64,000 bases of DNA, from NCBI GenBank assembly GCA_977020255.1, contig CDROCS010002070.1, positions 1 through 64,000 on the forward strand, in the 5' to 3' direction. Positions 33,503-41,777 of this stretch are shown in pieces. Source of the stretch: Obrimoposthia wandeli. Its lineage: Eukaryota. The position numbers and the translations under genes were made by a program. Under the pieces are notes generated by a model. The model searched no databases. It was given only the letters and a program-made list of their open reading frames with translations, and was not told where the DNA came from. How positions within the stretch are numbered: the stretch's first letter is position 1; each line of letters starts with the position of its first letter.

Positions 33503-34198
33503 TTAGTCACATTTAATACGATATTCTTTATGACTTTTCTTGGTATGTTGCTTGATTGCCTTAAGCACTGTTTTAACTTCTTTTTTGCCGTCTGCTGTTT
33601 GTAATTGCTTAAACAGACCCGTCAATTTTTCAATGCCTTGCTGATAGCCCTGATGCTGCATGTGAGTTTGGTGGTCCATGCCGGGCATATTTTCCATTTG
33701 GCTATGATCCATCGCTGGCATATCTTTATTCATGGCTGACATGTCATGATCCATACCAGGCATATCTTTATTCATCGCGGACATGTCGTGATTCATAGCA
33801 GGCATGTCTTTATTCATGGCAGACATGTCATGATCCATACCAGGCATGTCTTTATTCATTGCGGACATGTCATGATCCATAGCAGGCATGTCGTGATTCA
33901 TAGCAGGCATGTCATGATTCATCGCAGGCATGTCATGATTCTTCAGCTTTACCGGAATCTCATTTCTTGCCTTCATTGAGTTGGCAAGTAACTTCGTTAC
34001 CTGAGCTTGCATGGCCGTGGCATCATTACGTTTAAATGCCGCGACATAGGATTTTAAGTCGTCATTCATCTCTTTCATCATGCCGCTTAGCGCGGTATCT
34101 TCGCAGTGTGTTTCGCCATCATGAGCGAACACCGGCAGACTGAGTGCGGCAGACAGTACTAGCGATCCTGCTATCGTTTTTGTCATTTTGTTTAACAT
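33503..34198 (-). CDS. Periplasmic cytochrome b562-like four-helix bundle with large Met/His-rich loop insertion
   Basis: Signal peptide ..PVFA; LSGMMKEMNDDLK ~ LEDNMETLNDNLK, IPVKL ~ TPPKL, YQQGIEKL ~ FRHGFDIL, SHKEYR ~ YHQKYR of E. coli b562 (alignment from memory). Confidence 0.75.
   Translation of the reverse strand: MLNKMTKTIAGSLVLSAALSLPVFAHDGETHCEDTALSGMMKEMNDDLKSYVAAFKRNDATAMQAQVTKLLANSMKARNEIPVKLKNHDMPAMNHDMPAMNHDMPAMDHDMSAMNKDMPGMDHDMSAMNKDMPAMNHDMSAMNKDMPGMDHDMSAMNKDMPAMDHSQMENMPGMDHQTHMQHQGYQQGIEKLTGLFKQLQTADGKKEVKTVLKAIKQHTKKSHKEYRIKCD
33710..33940 (-). repeat. Eleven coding 21-bp tandem repeats ([N/D][H/K]DM[P/S][A/G]M) with 42-bp higher-order period
   Basis: NHDMPAM x3, then alternating [D/N]HDMSAM and NKDMP[G/A]M x8. 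Confidence 0.95.
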
Positions 34199-34220: not shown

Positions 34221-37200
34221 TTAATTGTCTGTTGTTAATTTTTTATTAGAGGCTGCGGTACTGTCATCATCCTCGGTCATGATCGATTTCAAGCTGAACT
34301 GTTTCCACAGGTAGAACATGGCCGGTAGTACCAACAAGGTTAGCATTAACGCTGAAGCCATACCGCCAATCATTGGCGCGGCAATACGCTGCATCACTTG
34401 TGAGCCAGTTCCTTCACCAAACATAATGGGCACAAGGCCGATGATAACAGTGGCGACGGTCATCATGACGGGACGTACTCGTAAACCAGCACCTTCCATT
34501 ATTGCCTGACGTAATTTGGCTTTAGTTAGCTGGCCAGCTGCAATAGCGGCATCGAGTGATTGATTTAAATAAACCAACATGATGACACCAATCTCAACGG
34601 CAACACCAGCGAGGGCGATGAAACCAACACCGACGGCAATCGAAAAATTATAGTTGAGCAAGTAAAGTAACCAGATGCCACCGATCATCGCCAGCGGTAA
34701 AGTACCCAAAATCAGTAATACTTCACCGACACGTCTAAATGCCAGGTAGAGTAATAACACGATAATAGCGAGTGTGGCAGGGATCACCACCGTTAAGGTT
34801 TCCTTCGCGCGCTGCATATATTCGTATTGACCAGACCAGGTAATAGAATAACCAGCAGGCAAGACGAGTTGTTCCGCCACAGCTTTTTGCGCGTCCAGTA
34901 CATAAGAGCCAAGATCACGGCCTGCGATATCAACATAGATCCAGCCATTAGGACGGGCATTTTCAGTTTTTATCATCGGCGCACCATCTTCAACATAGAC
35001 GTTAGCCACGTCGCTTAAGGCTATACGAGCGCCTTGCGGTGTGATTATCGGCAGTAATTTCATTTGCTCGATGCTGTCGCGGTAGGTTTGTGGATAACGC
35101 ACATTAACCGGATAACGCTCTAATCCTTCAATGGTTTGGGTTACATTCATCCCGCCAACTGCGGTGGATACGACGGCTTGTACATCAGCAATGTTAAGAC
35201 CATAACGTGCAGCTTTTGCCCGCTGTATATCAACCTTAACATAACGGCCTCCGGCGACTCGCTCAGCATAAGCAGAGGTTGTACCTTCAACGTTAAGCAA
35301 TATTTTTTCTATGTCTTTACCAATTTTTTCTATTTCAGCCAGTTTCTCACCCGCTACCTTGATACCAATGGGGGTTTTGATACCTGTGGCTAACATATCG
35401 GTACGTGTTTTGATTGGCATTACCCAGGCGTTGGTGACACCAGGGAACTTGATCAACGAGTCTAATTCTTCGCGTAAACCTGCTGATGTCATGCCGTCTC
35501 GCCACTGATCTTTGGGTTTTAAACTGATGAAGGTTTCTATCATCGTTAATGGCGCGGCGTCTGTTGCTGTTTCTGCACGTCCAGCTTTGCCCCAAACGCG
35601 TTCCACTTCAGGCACGGTTTTGATCAATTTATTGGTTTGTTGCAGCAATTCTCTGGCTTTACCGATACTGATCCCCGGATAGGTAGTCGGCATGTACATT
35701 AGATCACCTTCATCTAGAGGTGGAATAAATTCACTGCCGATCTTGTTTACCGGATAAAAGCCGACGACAAGTAAACCCGCAACCACAAATAACAGCAGTA
35801 AAGGTGCTTTTAAGCTGAATGTTAGTAGCGGTCGATACAGGGCAATAAGACCACGATTAATCGGATTTTTGTGTTCTGGTAGTACCTTACCGCGAATGAA
35901 GTAACCCATCAGGATAGGCACTAAAGTCACCGCGAGTCCGGCTGCTGCTGCCATCGAATAGGTCTTCGTAAAGGCGAGGGGAGAAAACATCTTGCCTTCT
36001 TGTCCTTGCAGTGCAAATACTGGCACGAAACTAAAGGTAATGATCAGTAGGGAAAAGAACAGTGCTGGACCGACTTCGGATGCAGCTTTGCTGATCACCT
36101 GCCAACGATTTTCATCCGTCAACGGTGTTTTTTCCATGTGTTTATGCACATTTTCAACCATCACGATAGCACCGTCGACCATAGCACCAATGGCGATAGC
36201 GATACCGCCTAATGACATGATGTTGGCATTAATACCCTGCCAAGACATGACGATAAAAGCCACCAAAATACCGACGGGTAAACTGATTAAGACCACCAGT
36301 GAGCTGCGGATGTGGAACAGGAATACCGCGCACACGACAACGACCACTAGAAACTCTTCAAATAGCTTTTCGTAGAGGTTTTCTACTGCATTATCGATCA
36401 GGGTAGAGCGATCGTAAGTCGGAACAATTTCAACACCTTCCGGTAAAGATCCCTGCAACGTTTTAAGTTTAGCTTTGACGGCTGCAATGACATCACGGGC
36501 ATTTTCGCTGTAACGCATGACGATGATACCGCCAACAACTTCACCTTCACCATTAAGCTCCGATACACCACGGCGCATTTGCGGCCCGATAACGATGTCG
36601 GCCACATCACCGAGTAATAACGGCGTGCCAGTTGCGCTCAGTTTTAACGGGATGTTTTTCAGATCTTCAATAGAACTGATATAACCATTGGCGCGCACCA
36701 TATATTCCGCTTCAGCCATTTCAATCACACTGGCGCCTGCTTCTTGGTTGCCCTGTTTTATGGCGTTGCTAATGGCAGACAGTGGAATTTGATAACTGCT
36801 TAATTTATCTGGGTCAACGCTGATCTGGTATTGTTTAACCATACCGCCGACCGTCGCCACTTCCGATACACCCGGTACGGTTTGCAGTTCATACTTTAAG
36901 AACCAATCTTGTAGACTGCGTAATTGGCTAAGATCATGATTACCGCTGGTATCGATTAACGCATAGGAATAGACCCAGCCAACGCCTGTTGCATCGGGTC
37001 CTAATGCTGGTTTGGCTGTGCTAGGCAAATTCGGTGTTACCTGAGAAAGGTATTCAAGCACCCGAGACCGAGCCCAGTACATATCTGTGCCATCTTCAAA
37101 AATGACATAAACATAAGAGTCGCCAAAGAAGGAGAAACCACGCACTGTTTTTGCACCTGGTACGGATAACATCGCGGTGGTTAGCGGGTAAGTGACTTGG

Positions 37201-37388
37201 TCTTCAACTACTTGTGGCGCTTGTCCTGGATAACTGGTTTTAATGATCACCTGTACATCGGAGAGATCTGGGATCGCGTCGATCGGGGTATTTTTGACTA
37301 CAAAGCTACCGTAGACAATAATAATAAAGGTCGCTAACAAGACTAGCATCCGATTGTGGATCGACCATTCAATAATGCGTTTGATCAT
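34221..37388 (-). CDS. cusA: CusA-family Cu/Ag heavy-metal RND efflux pump
   Basis: [73 protein letters not shown]. Confidence 0.95.
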
Positions 37389-38914
37389 TACATGTCACCT
37401 TCTACGTCGTCATCATCAAAGTCTAACCAATCCAAAGCGTCATCACTATCAATTTCAGTCTCTGAATTAGTGCTAGTTTCAGCCTCCGTTTTTTGCTGCT
37501 CCATGCCGGAGTGATCCATTGTCGAGTGGTCCATCGCTGCATGGTTCATGGCCGAATGATCCATCGCCATTGCAGGTTGTTGTGGTGATTGTTGTTGCGA
37601 AGAGACTGGATCGATGCGACTAAAGTCTGCTGTTAAGCTAGATTCAGAATCTATCAGGAACTGAGCACTGGTCACGACCTTATTCCCGGCGGCTAACCCA
37701 GCCATAACTTCAACATAACCCGCTGATTCTCGTCCTATCGTAACCCTGACAGATTGATATTGACCGTCGCCTTTGGCCAGTACTACCCGATCAAAATTGC
37801 CAGCACGGATCACGGCTTCGCGAGGTACCTGTAAGCTGGTGGACTGAGTTTGGCTGAGCAATTTCAGCTTGGCGAACATATTAGGTTTTAACTGTTTATC
37901 TTCATTACTAAATTTAACGCGGACTTTCAGTGTTCGAGTCGCTGCGTTTAATTCTGGATAGATGTAATCAATCTCGCCATGCCAAGTTCTGCCTGGGAAG
38001 CTATCAAGTTGCATTTCACCCTTATCGCCGACTTGTACTAAACCTGCTTGCGATTCAAATACTTCAGCTTGCAGCCAGATCTCATCTAACTGTCCCGCTT
38101 CGATGATCTGTGACGCCGGCGTAATGTATGCACCTTCACGTACGCCTAACTTGGTAATAAAACCTGACTCAGGGGCGAAAATAGTTACATTCTGTTGGGC
38201 TTTTCGCTTGCTGCTAATCTGACTGATTTGTGCTTTGTTAATACCGAGTGCAGACAAACGATTTTTTGATGATGAAATTAAGGTTTTATTACCGATACGT
38301 AAGGCATTGAGCAACTCTTCTTGGGCTTTAATTAATTCAGGAGAATAAAGGGACAGGAGCTTTTGGCCTTTGCTTACTTGCTCTCCTGTTTCCTTGATGT
38401 AGAGCTGTTCTATCCAGCCGGATACGCGACTATTAATCTGCCACAGACTGTGTTGATCAAACTCTAGTCGCCCCACTGTATTAATTTGTGGGATAAAAGG
38501 ACGCTGACTCACGGTTTGCGTGCGCACGCCGAGGTTATTTTCTACGCGCGGAGAAATGGTGACTAAACCGGCATCACTGGCTGTTGCTGCATTACCGTAC
38601 ACAGGGACAAGATCCATCCCCATCGGTGATTTACCTGGTTGGTCGCGACGATAACTGGCGTCCATCGGTGCTACCCAGTAAAGCGGTTCTTTTACTACTG
38701 ACGCTGGCACATCGGGATAAACGGGCACCAGATCCATGCCCATTGGTGATTTACCCGGTTGATCACGGCGATAGTTGGCGTCCATTGGTGCTACCCAATA
38801 AAGCGGTGTAGCTTCGGCACTATTAGCAAAACTATCAGCTTGATAAGTTGTAAACCAAACGCCTGCGGCCAACCCGAGGGCAAGCGTAATTGAACTGGCG
38901 ATAATTGTTTTCAT
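37388..38914 (-). CDS. cusB: CusB-family periplasmic adaptor with two N-terminal heavy-metal-binding repeats and Met/His plus acidic tail
   Basis: [27 protein letters not shown] x2; [40 protein letters not shown]; TAATG coupling to cusA. Confidence 0.92.
38597..38806 (-). repeat. Duplicated 90-bp metal-binding module in cusB (120-bp period)
   Basis: Copies at 38597..38686 and 38717..38806. Confidence 0.9.
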
Positions 38915-38922
38915 GAAAACCT

Positions 38923-40179
38923 CTATAATGCTTGAAAGTAACGAATGCGGGCTAATGTTTTTAGACTCTGAAAATGCAGTTGCTGGTACTCCAGCTCTAG
39001 CGCTTGCTCATCCATAAATGCTTTGATTACCTGTTCAAAGTTATTGGTATTGAGCTGATAACCTTGTAAGGATGCTTCGGTATTGCGCTTGGCATGAGGA
39101 AGTAGCGTATCCTGATAGCGTTGCATTCGAGATTCGGTATTCAGAAAATTGGCGATAGCACCGTTTAAAATGCCATTGAATTTAATCAATAGCAGATCTT
39201 TTTCAGCTTTTTTGATGCCCTTGCCCTGAGTGGCCGCGATGACAACTTGGTCTTGGCGATTACCGGTAAATAAGGGGATATTCATGGTTACTGAACCGCT
39301 GAGTAAATCACTGCGCGCCGATCCTGTTGCCATATCTAACGCTTCTCGGTGGCCGTCGCCCACATCGACTTTAAAAGCTGGTTTATAGGATTCATTCGCT
39401 ATTTCGATGGTGTTTTCAGCTACATCAATAGCTTGCTGCGCGGCCAGTACCTGAGGATGGCTTGCTAGAAGTTGATAGTGCACAACCTTACCTTGCTTGG
39501 CATAATCACGGCTTGCTTGCCATTGAGGAATTTGCGAGTCGAGTTGTTCGAAAGCTTGTGAACCAATCCACGCCAGTAGCTGGCCACGTAATGCCTGCTC
39601 TTGTTGGGCGAAGGCCGCAATTTTGTCGTCGAATTTAGCCAGCTCTAGTTCGGCATTGATAAGGTCTTGATTTTGCTTATAACCGAGCTCAAATTGACGG
39701 TAGAGGTTGTCTACATTCAATTTAAATAAGGCTTGGTTTTTTTGCAAAATTTCTTGAGCAAGTTTGGTAAAGCGAATATCAAACCAAAGTTCTCTGATCT
39801 TTAGTTTTAGCTCTGCTTGACGGTTAGCTGACAGCTGTACGCTTTGCAGTGCTTGCAGGTTGAAATTGTTGGCGTTTAACGCGAGTGTATCGCCGCGAGA
39901 AAATTGTTGTGACATACCAATACTAAACTGCGTCATGGGATCGTCAGTTAACGAGAAGCTGTCTATTGGTACATTCGCTAAACCGAGTTTTATCATCGGA
40001 TCAGTCAGTTGTGATGAACTGATCGCTTGCGCTTTAAAACGGGTCTGCTGAGCAGTGTAGATCTGGGCTGTTGGATCGCTTTGCAGGGCGAAGTTTTCCG
40101 CTGCAGATAGCGTTAACAGCTGAGCATTAACATTAAATGTAAATAACGTTAATAGCCCAAAATAAATTTTGGATGGCAT
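38923..40179 (-). CDS. TolC/CusC-family outer-membrane efflux channel
   Basis: Signal peptide; DPMIKLG..NVP, DPMTQFSIGMSQQFSRG, HPQV, SVTMNIPLF; first structural gene before cusBA. Confidence 0.87.
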   Translation of the reverse strand: MPSKIYFGLLTLFTFNVNAQLLTLSAAENFALQSDPTAQIYTAQQTRFKAQAISSSQLTDPMIKLGLANVPIDSFSLTDDPMTQFSIGMSQQFSRGDTLALNANNFNLQALQSVQLSANRQAELKLKIRELWFDIRFTKLAQEILQKNQALFKLNVDNLYRQFELGYKQNQDLINAELELAKFDDKIAAFAQQEQALRGQLLAWIGSQAFEQLDSQIPQWQASRDYAKQGKVVHYQLLASHPQVLAAQQAIDVAENTIEIANESYKPAFKVDVGDGHREALDMATGSARSDLLSGSVTMNIPLFTGNRQDQVVIAATQGKGIKKAEKDLLLIKFNGILNGAIANFLNTESRMQRYQDTLLPHAKRNTEASLQGYQLNTNNFEQVIKAFMDEQALELEYQQLHFQSLKTLARIRYFQAL

Positions 40180-40187
40180 TTTTATTC

Positions 40188-40229
40188 CTTATTAATTGAT
40201 TTTTAAAATAATTAAAATCAACCAATAAG
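40188..40229 (-). promoter_or_regulatory. 16-bp hairpin sequestering the cusC Shine-Dalgarno
   Basis: mRNA CUUAUUGGUUGAUUUU (40229..40214) pairs with AAAAUCAAUUAAUAAG (40203..40188) using two G-U pairs; SD AAGGA at 40190..40186. Confidence 0.7.
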
Positions 40230-40613
40230 AGGGGGACGATATAAGCTTTCTGGATGTTGTTCAGGGAGAGGGGCAGGGAAATACAATACAGTCGTTGTTT
40301 GATCTTGACTGGCAACGATTAATAGATTGGTGCTGATAAAAGGCAGTGAACTGGCGGTGCTACAATCACCATAATTGCACATGTCACAATTACTTTCGCT
40401 CATCGCGGTAAGATGATTGCTGGTTGACGTATCATCCATGTGACAAAGATTGTCTGTGTTCTCGTCTAAATTGCCTCGCATCATTCCCGGCATCATTTGC
40501 ATGTCACACGGAATATTTGCAGACATAACGTGGCTGTTCATTGCCTGAAGAGGTAATGAAAATGAGTTTATTAATAATAATAAAACCAAAGCCAAAGCGC
40601 GCATGAAAGACAT
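40218..40613 (-). CDS. Exported Cys/Met-rich leader protein ending YRPPLIG (DUF2946/CutF-like)
   Basis: Signal peptide, CDMQMMPGMM, CDMCNYGDC, Pro-rich C-terminus PAPLPEQHPESLYRPP. Confidence 0.7.
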   Translation of the reverse strand: MSFMRALALVLLLLINSFSLPLQAMNSHVMSANIPCDMQMMPGMMRGNLDENTDNLCHMDDTSTSNHLTAMSESNCDMCNYGDCSTASSLPFISTNLLIVASQDQTTTVLYFPAPLPEQHPESLYRPPLIG

Positions 40614-40633
40614 CTTTTAATGAAAGTACATGT

Positions 40634-40664
40634 AATTTAAGCATTACCCCTATGGTAAGGTCAA
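40634..40664 (-). promoter_or_regulatory. MerR/CueR-type promoter for leader-cusCBA-b562 operon
   Basis: -35 TTGACC, 19-bp spacer, -10 TAAATT; dyad ACCTTAC-N7-GTAATGC versus CueR box ACCTTCC-N7-GGAAGGT. Confidence 0.7.
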
Positions 40665-40711: not shown

Positions 40712-40740
40712 TTGACAATATAGCAGGTCTTATAGATAAT
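40712..40740 (+). promoter_or_regulatory. Near-consensus sigma70 promoter for the rightward leader/DUF411 unit
   Basis: TTGACA-17 bp-GATAAT. Confidence 0.6.
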
Positions 40741-40766: not shown

Positions 40767-41138
40767 GTGATGCTAATACCAAGGCGTGTAATTAAGGTGA
40801 TCTGTCTGTTGCTAGTGAGTATTGTACTCTCGAGCCAGCTTGCCTATGCGCCACTTTCTGCCCATGAACGGTCAAATAACATTGCAGCCATCGATAATGC
40901 GATGCATTGTGATGCCGGGCAGATGATGGCTAACAACGCAAAAGATAACTGCTGTGATTCTTTGGAAAGTAATATTGAAAATAAATGTTGTTTCTCCAGT
41001 GCGACCACAAGTTATGCCATTATTTCATTATCCTCTTTGAATGCACGTCAGCCTTACACACTAAGCCTGATTAATCGTGATCCATCTAAAGCTAGTTTTA
41101 CTATCCCTGCTCTCTTGTATCGACCTCCCATCGTTTAA
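40767..41138 (+). CDS. Second exported Cys-rich leader protein ending YRPPIV (DUF2946/CutF-like)
   Basis: Hydrophobic signal, MHCDAGQMM, NCC..KCC, C-terminal PALLYRPPIV. Confidence 0.7.
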   Translation: MMLIPRRVIKVICLLLVSIVLSSQLAYAPLSAHERSNNIAAIDNAMHCDAGQMMANNAKDNCCDSLESNIENKCCFSSATTSYAIISLSSLNARQPYTLSLINRDPSKASFTIPALLYRPPIV

Positions 41139-41336
41139 TATTCCTTGTACTACACCACACATACGTTTGTTGCTTAATCTATTAATTTCGATATCAATAT
41201 TGATATCGACATAGATGAGGGAACATAGATTAAAAATGTGCAATCGATGTCAAAAATAGACCGATTGAACTAATCTATAAACAAAGTGTGCTGGCTATCC
41301 AAATTAAGTAATACTTCGAAATTTAAGGAATTTAAG
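41134..41336 (+). promoter_or_regulatory. Structured intercistronic RNA with anti-SD/SD long-range pairing
   Basis: UUUAA(U)AUUCCUUG (41134..41147) pairs with UAAGGAAUUUAAG (41324..41336); nested CACAC..TTTGT/ACAAAGTGTG, TTAATCTAT/ATAGATTAA and perfect 22-bp palindrome 41188..41209. Confidence 0.5.
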
Positions 41337-41777
41337 ATGAAAACGATTATCCAATTGATTGCCATATTATCACTCACATTTAGTGCAGTTGCATTCGCCA
41401 AACCGACGATTGAATTATACAAGTCACCGTCATGTGGTTGCTGTGTAGCATGGGCAGATATCATGGAAGAAAAAGGCTATAAAGTGAATGTGCATCATCA
41501 ACGTGATTGGTCAGCGGTGCAGAAGAAGTTCGGCATGCCGAATAATTTACAGTCTTGCCACACGGCGGTTGTTGACGGTTATATGATTGAAGGGCATGTG
41601 CCAGAAAAGGACGTAGCACGTTTACTTAGCGAACGACCGAGTGATATTACCGGTCTTTCTGCTCCAGGTATGCCGCAGCATTCCCCTGGTATGGCTGCAC
41701 CAGGCCAGGACTATAAAGACTTTAACGTTGTTGCGTTTGATAAAAATGGCAACTTGAGCTTATATAAAAAGTATTAA
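41337..41777 (+). CDS. DUF411/CopG-like periplasmic metal-binding protein
   Basis: YKSPSCGCC..W, SCHTA..GY.IEGHVP, APGMPQHSPGM. Confidence 0.88.
   Translation: MKTIIQLIAILSLTFSAVAFAKPTIELYKSPSCGCCVAWADIMEEKGYKVNVHHQRDWSAVQKKFGMPNNLQSCHTAVVDGYMIEGHVPEKDVARLLSERPSDITGLSAPGMPQHSPGMAAPGQDYKDFNVVAFDKNGNLSLYKKY

What the first reader, a model, noticed from the sequence alone, without database searches (positions are those of the whole stretch)
40177..40664. YRPP leader plus SD-sequestering hairpin upstream of cusC: candidate copper-sensing translation-arrest switch
Seen: a 131-aa exported Cys/Met-rich ORF ends YRPPLIG. A 16-bp stem starts at the codon right after the second Pro and buries the cusC SD; its two mismatches at DNA level are G-U pairs only on the coding strand. 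Known: DUF2946 leaders CutF (Rhodobacter) and CruR (Bordetella) use RAPP-like stalling and an SD hairpin to control downstream Cu genes. Inference: stalling at RPP, modulated by export and Cu binding, opens cusC translation. Use on an RND efflux operon, with RPP rather than RAPP, would extend the known systems.
Basis: partly seen in the sequence, partly recalled or inferred. Interest (0 to 1): 0.8.

Follow-up and report, generated by a model that had tools for sequence, protein, structure and literature searches.

The report
Copper-sensing leader peptide upstream of cusC
A small exported, cysteine-rich leader gene ending in LYRPPLIG has last codons that base-pair with the ribosome-binding site of the copper efflux gene cusC; it is a well-conserved Moritella member of the already published CutF/CopL-like class of copper-sensing, ribosome-stalling leaders, so it is a good test case and not a new kind of switch.

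Summary
On the minus strand, a 131-aa ORF (40218-40613) has a signal peptide and conserved Cys and Met residues, and ends LYRPPLIG. A 17-bp hairpin (40230-40214 with 40203-40187) starts at the last base of the second Pro codon and pairs with the AAGG of the cusC ribosome-binding site.

All 22 distinct Moritella-clade orthologues keep this hairpin, with compensatory changes. Synonymous codon variation shows that LYRPP is selected as peptide.

The wider family shows:
- an invariant RPP;
- a 3-residue tail in 40 of 47 members;
- a fixed 38-42-residue spacing from the last Cys to Arg;
- leader 3' ends that pair with the downstream ribosome-binding site far more than shuffled sequences do.

The most likely mechanism is a CutF-type switch, in which a copper-modulated pause at Pro-Pro frees the cusC ribosome-binding site. 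This sits downstream of a conserved CueR-type promoter. No stalling or copper response was measured.

- The leader is not a Pfam DUF2946 member. The nearest named family is CopL, below cut-off.
- Ozturk et al. 2023 already report RND outer-membrane genes as the commonest neighbours of CutF-like leaders.
- CruR uses Rho-dependent termination, not a hairpin over the ribosome-binding site.

Verdict: new member of a known kind. The scan's earlier notes hold only this stretch and its divergent paralogue.

The parts
40634..40664 (-). CueR/MerR-type promoter: -35 TTGACC (40664-40659), 19-nt spacer holding a CCTT..N..AAGG-type dyad (40658-40640), -10 TAAATT (40639-40634)
   Evidence: This block is the only strongly conserved stretch in the upstream regions of 16 orthologous loci. 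No 16-18-nt-spacer sigma-70 promoter was found on this strand. A CueR orthologue scores above cut-off in the M. dasanensis genome. The resemblance to the E. coli copA CueR box is from memory.
40218..40613 (-). Leader ORF, 131 aa (probably 128 aa from ATG 40604), CopL-like/CutF-like
40542..40613 (-). Signal peptide (residues 1-24, ...SFSLPLQA|M), nearly invariant in orthologues
   Evidence: Alignment. AlphaFold2 predicts only helix 2-25, with pLDDT above 90.
40362..40388 (-). Cys cluster C76-x7-C84 (CDMCNYGDC), 50 and 42 residues before Arg126; candidate metal-sensing site, together with C36, C57 and Met-rich 38-45
   Evidence: Conserved columns. C84 is invariant in the wider family.
40230..40244 (-). 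LYRPP codons (L124-P128); proposed pause site with Pro127 in the P site and Pro128 in the A site
   Evidence: Nearly invariant as peptide while the codons vary synonymously: Arg CGT/CGA/CGC/AGG, Pro1 CCC/CCT/CCG.
40214..40230 (-). 5' arm of the hairpin (the arm that pairs with the ribosome-binding site): last base of the Pro128 codon, Leu-Ile-Gly codons, TGA stop (40220-40218) and 4 nt
40204..40213 (-). Hairpin loop (10 nt)
40187..40203 (-). 3' arm of the hairpin, ending in AAGG of the cusC ribosome-binding site (AAGGA, 40190-40186)
38923..40179 (-). cusC-like outer-membrane efflux protein (418 aa)
   Evidence: PF02321 OEP, E = 3.7e-21
37388..38914 (-). cusB-like periplasmic adaptor with N-terminal heavy-metal-binding domain
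   Evidence: PF16576, PF19335 and the NCBIfam CusB subfamily
34221..37388 (-). cusA/czcA-type heavy-metal RND pump
   Evidence: TIGR00914, 1285.8 bits, above cut-off
40767..41138 (+). Divergent paralogous leader (123 aa, ends LYRPPIV), upstream of a DUF411 gene (ATG 41339)
   Evidence: The sequence just after its stop pairs with the DUF411 ribosome-binding site about 200 nt away: 6.7 expected pairs against 1.4 in shuffles, reached by 8 of 200.

Best explanation
The 131-aa ORF is a regulatory leader of the CutF/CopL-like class that controls translation initiation of cusCBA. Transcription starts at a CueR-type promoter, so it responds to cytoplasmic Cu(I). This step is inferred. The leader is translated and, because of its strongly hydrophobic signal peptide, is probably exported co-translationally. 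Its last three codons, its stop codon and the last base of the Pro128 codon form the 5' arm of a 17-bp hairpin whose 3' arm contains the cusC ribosome-binding site, so that site is normally hidden. This step is shown by sequence and covariation. When the ribosome pauses with Pro127 in the P site and Pro128 in the A site, it covers roughly 40235-40220. That is the part of the 5' arm that pairs with AAGG. The remaining 6 A-U-rich pairs cannot hold, the ribosome-binding site is freed about 30 nt ahead of the paused ribosome, and a second ribosome can initiate on cusC. The geometry follows from the sequence and the known ribosome footprint. By analogy with CutF, copper bound by the Cys/Met-rich nascent chain lengthens the pause and so raises CusCBA synthesis. 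This last step is inferred. The Cys cluster sits a fixed 42-50 residues behind Arg126, and C36, C57 and the Met-rich segment lie further out.
For: (1) LYRPP(L/I) is nearly invariant in 21 homologues that are only 36-89% identical, and whose N-terminal halves carry indels of up to 25 residues. R, P and P are invariant in 47 remote relatives. The codons vary synonymously, so the peptide is under selection. (2) The tail after PP is 3 residues in 40 of 47. The last-Cys-to-Arg spacing is 42 in 18 of 20 Moritella sequences and 38-40 in 38 of 47 family members. CruR has the same layout (CXXC, 45 residues, RAPP, 3 residues, stop), as does CutF (CxxxC about 41 residues before PPP). (3) All 22 distinct orthologous junctions fold into the same hairpin with the ribosome-binding-site G's paired. 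89% of cells are paired, 5 pairs have changes on both sides, and 0 of 500 shuffles reach the covariation score; slid partners pair at 53% or less. Ile is ATT in 21 of 22 and the stop is TGA in 21 of 22, while codons outside the stem vary. (4) In 15 other gammaproteobacterial loci, leader 3' ends pair with the 13 nt before the downstream start: 6.9 expected pairs against 1.8 in shuffles, 14 of 15 higher, p = 6e-5. (5) Downstream genes of the family are copper genes: CusC-like in at least 10 of 30 loci, plus CusB and proteins with Tat signal peptides that look like multicopper oxidases. This agrees with PMC9973294. (6) AlphaFold2 predicts no fold beyond the signal helix (pTM 0.27), as reported for CruR. 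(7) The mechanism is shown experimentally for CutF: stem-loop, Cys motif, signal peptide, PPP and EF-P.
Against: No pause, copper binding or copper-dependent expression has been measured for this or any RND-linked member. Two prolines are a weaker staller than the PPP of CutF and are normally rescued by EF-P; the motif is not RxPP, so the RAPP arrest mechanism cannot be assumed. Any ribosome finishing the leader opens the stem, so plain translational coupling explains the hairpin without copper sensing. The hairpin alone scores only z = -2.1. RNAalifold gives a weak consensus energy on the MAFFT alignment. The orthologues are closely related, so the compensatory cells are not all independent events. 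A-C mismatches are nearly as frequent as G-U. At the pause, C76 and C84 would still be near the tunnel exit or the translocon, so periplasmic access is uncertain for them. Homology to DUF2946 is not demonstrable.
Confidence: 0.62

Rival explanations
1. Plain translational coupling. The hairpin only makes cusC translation depend on leader translation, because terminating ribosomes open it. The leader is a genuine periplasmic metal-binding or regulatory protein (CopL/CzcI-like), and its LYRPP C-terminus serves the mature protein. No copper-modulated pause occurs.
For: The stop codon lies inside the 5' arm, so every terminating ribosome melts the stem. Two of 47 relatives also hit the CzcI family, which is thought to act as a protein. 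PP is a weak stall motif by general knowledge.
Against: It does not explain the fixed 3-residue tail, the fixed Cys-to-RPP spacing next to a freely variable N-terminal half, or the absence of any predicted fold. Nor does it explain why the same layout recurs in CruR and CutF, where the C-terminal motif acts in cis on the ribosome.
Confidence: 0.22
2. CruR-like inverse logic. The ribosome stalls at RPP without copper, and copper relieves the stall, which lowers downstream expression (for CruR through Rho-dependent termination).
For: CruR has the same Cys-spacer-R(A)PP-3-residue layout and senses copper as a nascent chain independently of export.
Against: The downstream operon is an efflux pump that should be induced by copper, not repressed. 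The spacer is 38 nt and A+T-rich, with no C-rich unstructured stretch for Rho, against 162 nt in cruR-bfrG. A hairpin over the ribosome-binding site fits the CutF design. The promoter is of the copper-activated CueR type.
Confidence: 0.06
3. The hairpin is a chance A+T-rich palindrome or a DNA operator, and the ORF is an ordinary small secreted protein with no regulatory link to cusC.
For: The z-score is only -2.1 in an A+T-rich region. A-C mismatches are nearly as common as G-U, so strand asymmetry is not shown.
Against: The hairpin is kept with compensatory changes in 22 orthologues. It always ends on the ribosome-binding site. The same leader-3'-end to ribosome-binding-site pairing occurs in unrelated sequence contexts across the family, including long-range versions.
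Confidence: 0.04

Closest known systems
CutF of Rhodobacter capsulatus (cutFOG; Ozturk et al. 2021, 2023, 2025 preprint)
   Same: Both are small Sec-exported leaders with a Cys motif about 41-50 residues before a C-terminal proline motif, a 2-3-residue tail and a short intergenic spacer with a stem-loop hiding the downstream ribosome-binding site. The downstream gene is a copper-detoxification gene that should be induced by copper.
   Different: CutF ends PEPEGPPPRL (PPP, EF-P-dependent) and controls a Tat-exported multicopper oxidase. Here the motif is LYRPP(L/I), the target is an RND outer-membrane gene, and the arm pairing with the ribosome-binding site is made of the tail codons themselves. 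No sequence-profile link to DUF2946 was found. CutF is tested experimentally; this locus is not.
CruR (Bp2923) of Bordetella pertussis, Pfam DUF2946
   Same: Both are upstream ORFs with a signal peptide, a Cys motif at a fixed spacing of about 45 residues from an Arg-(x)-Pro-Pro motif three residues before the stop. CruR is predicted to be unstructured and acts in cis.
   Different: CruR has CXXC and RAPP, works through Rho-dependent termination in a 162-nt spacer, is independent of its signal peptide and of EF-P, and copper turns an import gene off.
CopL of Xanthomonas/Stenotrophomonas (NCBIfam NF033807 CopL_fam)
   Same: This is the best named sequence match (E = 4e-6). 42 of 47 remote relatives of the leader hit this model. 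CopL is required in cis for copper-induced expression of the downstream copA oxidase, as summarised in PMC9973294.
   Different: The window protein scores 27.4 bits against a 40-bit cut-off. Its downstream gene is cusC rather than copA.
CutF-like leaders upstream of OEP/CusC/SilC genes (list D of Ozturk et al. 2023; nodes labelled CusD, SilD)
   Same: The genomic arrangement is the same. OEP is reported as the most frequent downstream neighbour of CutF-like proteins.
   Different: That work reports neighbours and intergenic lengths only. It gives no hairpin, covariation or experimental test for RND-linked members in the text I could read. I could not check whether Moritella proteins are in its list.
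RAPP/RGPP arrest peptides (ApdA, ApdP, SecM-like)
   Same: Both have a C-terminal Arg plus Pro-Pro close to the stop, lie upstream of a regulated gene, and for the known peptides the pause has Pro in the P and A sites.
   Different: The defining R-x-P-P spacing is absent, because Arg is directly next to Pro-Pro here. Those peptides monitor the export machinery, not metals.

Membership tests
CutF-like proteins, by the rules of Ozturk et al. 2023 | Protein shorter than 150 aa | tested here: met
   131 aa, or 128 aa from Met4
CutF-like proteins, by the rules of Ozturk et al. 2023 | N-terminal Sec signal peptide | tested here: met
   Hydrophobic LALVLLLLI core followed by LQA|M. AlphaFold2 predicts helix 2-25 only. 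No dedicated signal-peptide predictor was available.
CutF-like proteins, by the rules of Ozturk et al. 2023 | PP motif within the last 15 residues | tested here: met
   P127-P128, 3 residues before the stop
CutF-like proteins, by the rules of Ozturk et al. 2023 | [quoted passage not shown] | tested here: met
   cusC starts 38 nt after the stop
CutF-type switch (mechanism) | Stem-loop hiding the downstream ribosome-binding site | tested here: met
   17-bp hairpin, conserved and covarying
CutF-type switch (mechanism) | Copper- and export-dependent ribosome stalling that raises downstream translation | not testable with these tools
   Needs toeprinting, ribosome profiling or reporter fusions
Pfam DUF2946 (PF11162) | Match to the family HMM | tested here: not met
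   No hit even at E<=10. 0 of 47 relatives hit. There is no match in 3 Moritella genomes. hhalign against 5 true members gives probability 12%, over the signal peptide only.
Pfam DUF2946 (PF11162) | Conserved CXXC motif | tested here: not met
   CDMC is present in the window protein, but the second Cys is Ser in most orthologues. The conserved pattern is C-x7-C, and DCC-x3-C-x-C-x4-C in the wider family.
Pfam DUF2946 (PF11162) | C-terminal RAPP motif | tested here: not met
   The motif is Y-R-P-P, with no residue between Arg and Pro-Pro
Pfam DUF2946 (PF11162) | Fixed spacing of about 45 residues between the Cys motif and the Arg-Pro-Pro motif, which lies 3 residues before the C terminus | tested here: met
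   Spacings of 42-50 residues; 3-residue tail in 40 of 47; compare
NCBIfam CopL_fam (NF033807) | HMM score at or above the 40-bit cut-off | tested here: not met
   The window protein scores 27.4 bits, E = 4.2e-6, aligned over 8-128 of the protein and 6-127 of 129 profile positions. It is therefore a sub-threshold relative, not a scored member. 42 of 47 relatives hit at E<=1e-3, best 3.6e-12.
RAPP-type arrest peptides | R-(A/G/S/P)-P-P core | tested here: not met
   The tail reads RPPL, and RPPI in relatives
E. coli-type cusCFBA/cusRS system | cusC, cusB and cusA genes in one operon | tested here: met
E. coli-type cusCFBA/cusRS system | cusF between cusC and cusB, and an adjacent cusRS two-component system | tested here: not met
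   cusB starts 9 nt after cusC. No two-component genes were found among the neighbours I scanned. The closest genome, M. dasanensis, has no CusS-type kinase above cut-off.

The most novel reading that the evidence does not exclude
CopL-like leaders ending (L/F)(Y/F)RPP(I/L)xx form a lineage of metal-sensing arrest peptides that cannot be linked to DUF2946 by sequence. They follow a general design rule: the pause-site and tail codons are themselves the sequence that pairs with the downstream ribosome-binding site, whatever the spacer length (38 to about 200 nt). In Moritella this leader, placed behind a CueR-type promoter, would make CusCBA synthesis require both cytoplasmic copper (for transcription) and envelope copper (for translation). 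It would take over the periplasmic sensing role that CusRS has in E. coli.
Probability: 0.35. Interest if true: 0.6.

Novelty: new member of a known kind. Interest (0 to 1): 0.42.

Why it matters
Copper-sensing by nascent exported leader peptides has been shown experimentally only for CutF (a multicopper oxidase) and CruR (a TonB-dependent importer). Published genome surveys say the commonest targets are RND efflux operons, and none of these has been tested. This Moritella locus is a compact case of that commonest arrangement. It has a 38-nt spacer, one local hairpin whose 5' arm is the three tail codons plus the stop, natural compensatory variants, and a paralogue in the same intergenic region that uses a long-range version. 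It would let the CutF model be tested on an efflux pump. It would also show whether an Arg-Pro-Pro motif without the Ala of RAPP, and with only two prolines, can arrest ribosomes. The family-wide pairing of leader 3' ends with the downstream ribosome-binding site and the fixed Cys-to-RPP spacing are practical rules for annotating such leaders, which Pfam currently misses here.

Tried and rejected
1. Pfam scans of the leader and its 46 relatives gave no DUF2946 hit. PF11162 found nothing in three Moritella genomes. hhalign of the family against five true DUF2946 proteins gave probability 12% over the signal peptide only. Homology to DUF2946 is therefore not claimed.
2. The strand-asymmetry test failed: G-U 29 cells against A-C 22 cells across orthologues. 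Part of the A-C count comes from a register shift in one subgroup of the MAFFT alignment.
3. RNAalifold on the MAFFT alignment recovered the helix, but with a weak energy of -2.9 kcal/mol. I relied on the per-sequence folds and the pair counts instead.
4. The genome search 'relatives' failed because the window's assembly (1.35 Gb) has no relatives in the collection. Orthologues came from other tools.
5. RNA evidence is too weak to count. Only assembled contigs from metatranscriptome libraries were available. One 162-nt contig spans 40117-40275, across the leader-cusC junction. It cannot prove a transcript, an end or a level.
6. AlphaFold2 gave no fold to search (pTM 0.27), so no fold search was run.
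7. A terminator reading is rejected: no terminator-like site was found and no U-run follows the stem.
8. A repeated-element reading is rejected: the hairpin is unique in the window.
9. The look-up of P0015 and the paper PMC3780873 (strengths of XPPX stall motifs) were not available.
10. The supplement of PMC9973294 that is held as text does not contain Moritella, so I could not tell whether these proteins are already in its list.
11. Complex prediction was not used, because no protein-protein claim is made.
Full report
WHAT IS THERE. The genes lie on the minus strand. ORF 40218-40613 encodes 131 aa. It begins with a hydrophobic signal-like segment (MSFMRALALVLLLLINSFSLPLQA), continues as a Met- and Cys-rich stretch, and ends ...ESLYRPPLIG. 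Thirty-eight nucleotides after its TGA stop, a 418-aa outer-membrane efflux protein starts (PF02321). It is followed by a CusB-type adaptor with a heavy-metal-binding domain and a CusA/CzcA-type RND pump (TIGR00914, 1285.8 bits). As RNA it forms a 17-bp stem, U40230-U40214 with A40203-G40187. The energy is -14.4 kcal/mol at 37 C with z = -2.1, and about -25 kcal/mol at 10 C. The lower temperature matters because Moritella species are cold-adapted (my knowledge). The 5' arm starts at the third base of the second Pro codon and contains the Leu-Ile-Gly codons and the stop. The 3' arm ends in AAGG of the AAGGA ribosome-binding site, 7 nt before the cusC ATG.

WHERE IT COMES FROM. The window is a bacterial contig inside a 1.35-Gb assembly. 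The leader is 99% identical to a protein of Moritella dasanensis ArB 0140. The same assembly holds a 97% copy on another contig and a 42% copy on a third.

THE PEPTIDE IS SELECTED AS A PEPTIDE. Nineteen homologues were found by the word-based search, and 6 genomic plus 12 metagenomic loci were recovered. [quoted passage not shown] The middle is variable, with indels of up to 25 residues, and only C36, C57, C76, C84 and a few Met are kept. Across 22 distinct junction sequences the Tyr, Arg, Pro and Pro codons vary synonymously. Arg uses CGT, CGA, CGC and AGG; the first Pro uses CCC, CCT and CCG. The conservation is therefore at the amino-acid level.

THE HAIRPIN IS SELECTED AS RNA. Every one of the 22 distinct orthologous junctions folds into the same hairpin, with the ribosome-binding-site G's paired (-8.9 to -20.1 kcal/mol). 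The last, variable residue of the leader (Gly, Ser, Asn, Val or Asp) changes the 5' arm, and the 3' arm follows. GG pairs with UU in the window, GG with CC in L005, AG with CU in L023 and GA with UC in L026. L028 shows a U-A to G-C switch. On the alignment, 89% of cells pair and 5 of 17 pairs show changes on both sides (19 cells). The covariation score is 0.145 against 0.076 in shuffles, reached by 0 of 500. Sliding the partners drops pairing to 53% or less. Inside the stem, synonymous choice is frozen: Ile is ATT in 21 of 22 and the stop is TGA in 21 of 22. There are caveats. The sequences are related, so cells are not independent events. RNAalifold's consensus energy is weak.

THE WIDER FAMILY. 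An exhaustive profile search found 50 cluster representatives at E<=1e-3. In the alignment of 47 of them, C84, R126, P127 and P128 are the only invariant columns, and the consensus C terminus is SL(Y/F)RPPI plus two residues. Forty-two of the 47 match NCBIfam CopL_fam (best E = 3.6e-12) and none matches Pfam DUF2946. The window protein itself scores 27.4 bits against CopL_fam, below the 40-bit cut-off. The tail after PP is 3 residues in 40 of 47. The last Cys lies 38-40 residues before Arg in 38 of 47, and 42 residues before it in 18 of 20 Moritella sequences. The distance from the first Cys varies between 87 and 113. CruR has the same layout: CXXC, about 45 residues, RAPP, three residues, stop. 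There the spacing was shown to matter (PMC9426467). CutF also shares it, with CxxxC about 41 residues before PPP. A family member was found in 46 of 401 sampled Gammaproteobacteria genomes, against 5 of 251 for DUF2946. Downstream genes in 30 loci include CusC-like proteins in at least 10. The others include CusB and proteins with Tat signal peptides that look like multicopper oxidases.

A FAMILY-LEVEL RNA RULE. In 15 non-Moritella loci with spacers of 30-130 nt, I counted base pairs between the leader's 3' end (Arg codon to 6 nt past the stop) and the 13 nt before the downstream start. The expected number is 6.9, against 1.8 in dinucleotide shuffles. Fourteen of the 15 loci are higher (Wilcoxon p = 6e-5; two of the loci are near-duplicates). 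In the window, the cusC leader gives 8.7 against 2.8. The divergent paralogue (40767-41138, ending LYRPPIV) gives 6.7 against 1.4 for a pairing about 200 nt away with the DUF411 gene's ribosome-binding site. The design 'pause-site and tail codons pair with the downstream ribosome-binding site' is therefore general in this family. Pro-Pro codons (CCUCC-like) are natural complements of a ribosome-binding site, which may be part of the reason.

MECHANISM. Pro-Pro and RAPP pauses place the first Pro in the P site and the second in the A site (for RAPP; general knowledge for PP). A ribosome paused there covers about 15 nt from the P-site codon, roughly 40235-40220. That is 11 of the 17 nucleotides of the 5' arm, including all partners of AAGG. 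The ribosome-binding site, 30 nt ahead, becomes free with room for a second ribosome. A terminating ribosome also opens the stem, but only briefly. The pause would lengthen the open time, as proposed for CutF. Because the target is an efflux pump, copper should enhance the pause. This step is inferred. AlphaFold2 predicts nothing but the signal helix (pTM 0.27). That fits a transient sensor rather than a folded periplasmic protein.

TRANSCRIPTION. The only conserved block upstream of the leader in 16 loci is CTTGACC, then a 19-nt spacer with a CCTTCCC...GGTAAGG dyad, then a TTAAAT-like -10 (40664-40634 in the window). This is the MerR/CueR promoter architecture; its likeness to the E. coli copA promoter is from memory. 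A CueR orthologue scores 161 bits, above its cut-off, in the M. dasanensis genome. No CusS-type kinase reaches its cut-off there. A two-level control, with cytoplasmic copper acting on transcription and envelope copper on translation, is plausible but inferred.

COMPARISON WITH THE LITERATURE. Ozturk et al. 2023 (PMC9973294) defined CutF-like proteins by four rules: shorter than 150 aa, a signal peptide, PP in the last 15 residues, and a same-strand neighbour. They found 5,334 of them. They state that OEP genes of RND systems (CusC/CzcC/SilC) are the most frequent neighbours, and that CopL falls in one of their clusters. They report intergenic lengths but no structure analysis for those members. 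The 2025 preprint shows EF-P-dependent stalling at the PPP of CutF. Roy et al. 2022 show that CruR works through RAPP and Rho-dependent termination. The present locus is therefore a new member of a known kind. This report adds several things. It gives covariation support for the hairpin in an RND-linked member. It sets out the fixed spacings and the tail rule for the CopL-like group. It shows the family-wide pairing of leader 3' ends with the downstream ribosome-binding site. It identifies the CueR-type promoter. It corrects the family assignment from DUF2946 to CopL-like.

VERDICT. Confidence in the CutF-type mechanism is about 0.6. The main rival is plain translational coupling with a protein-level role for the C terminus, at about 0.2.

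Noticed in passing
window 40767-41339 (+): A divergent paralogous leader (123 aa, ends LYRPPIV, weak CopL_fam hit) has a near-consensus sigma-70 promoter (40712-40740). The AUAUUCCUU right after its stop pairs with the UAAGGAAU ribosome-binding site of a DUF411 gene about 200 nt downstream: 6.7 expected pairs against 1.4 in shuffles, reached by 8 of 200.
   Followed up: partly
window 41188-41209: A perfect 22-nt palindrome (TCGATATCAATATTGATATCGA) lies in the spacer between the paralogous leader and the DUF411 gene. The 97% copy (L002) and M. dasanensis (L004) carry an insertion here. It forms the inner hairpin of the long-range fold.
   Followed up: no
whole window; G000 contigs C2070, C3952, C506: The window is a Moritella contig (99% to M. 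dasanensis ArB 0140 at this locus) inside a 1.35-Gb, 6912-contig assembly. That assembly also holds a 97% copy of the locus and a 42%-identical version on a contig longer than 2.1 Mb. The assembly probably contains more than one Moritella strain, as symbiont or contaminant.
   Followed up: partly
window 40634-40664 (-): A conserved CueR/MerR-type promoter (TTGACC, 19-nt spacer with a dyad, TAAATT) is the only conserved upstream block in 16 orthologous loci.
   Followed up: partly
L006, L014, L015, L019, L020, L027 (upstream of the leader): In one Moritella subgroup the leader-cusC operon sits directly after the 3' end of a tRNA gene (...GGTTCAAATCC...CCACCA) and a strong intrinsic terminator. 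This may be an island insertion site.
   Followed up: no
window 33503-34198 (-): A 231-aa ORF just downstream of cusA has no Pfam hit. There is no cusF between cusC and cusB.
   Followed up: no
L022:2882-2949: In one metagenomic orthologue the TGA stop is CGA, and the leader runs two codons further (ends LIDRF). The hairpin is kept with one C-A mismatch.
   Followed up: no
P0018: One homologue loses the LYRPP end (the C terminus reads ...RKLISASSH). It is probably a frameshift or a sequencing error on a 1.4-kb contig.
   Followed up: no
G001 (M. dasanensis genome): No CusS/CopS-type heavy-metal sensor kinase reaches the TIGR01386 cut-off (best 177 bits against 292.55). Moritella sp. PE36 and JT01 each have one, on other contigs.
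   Followed up: partly
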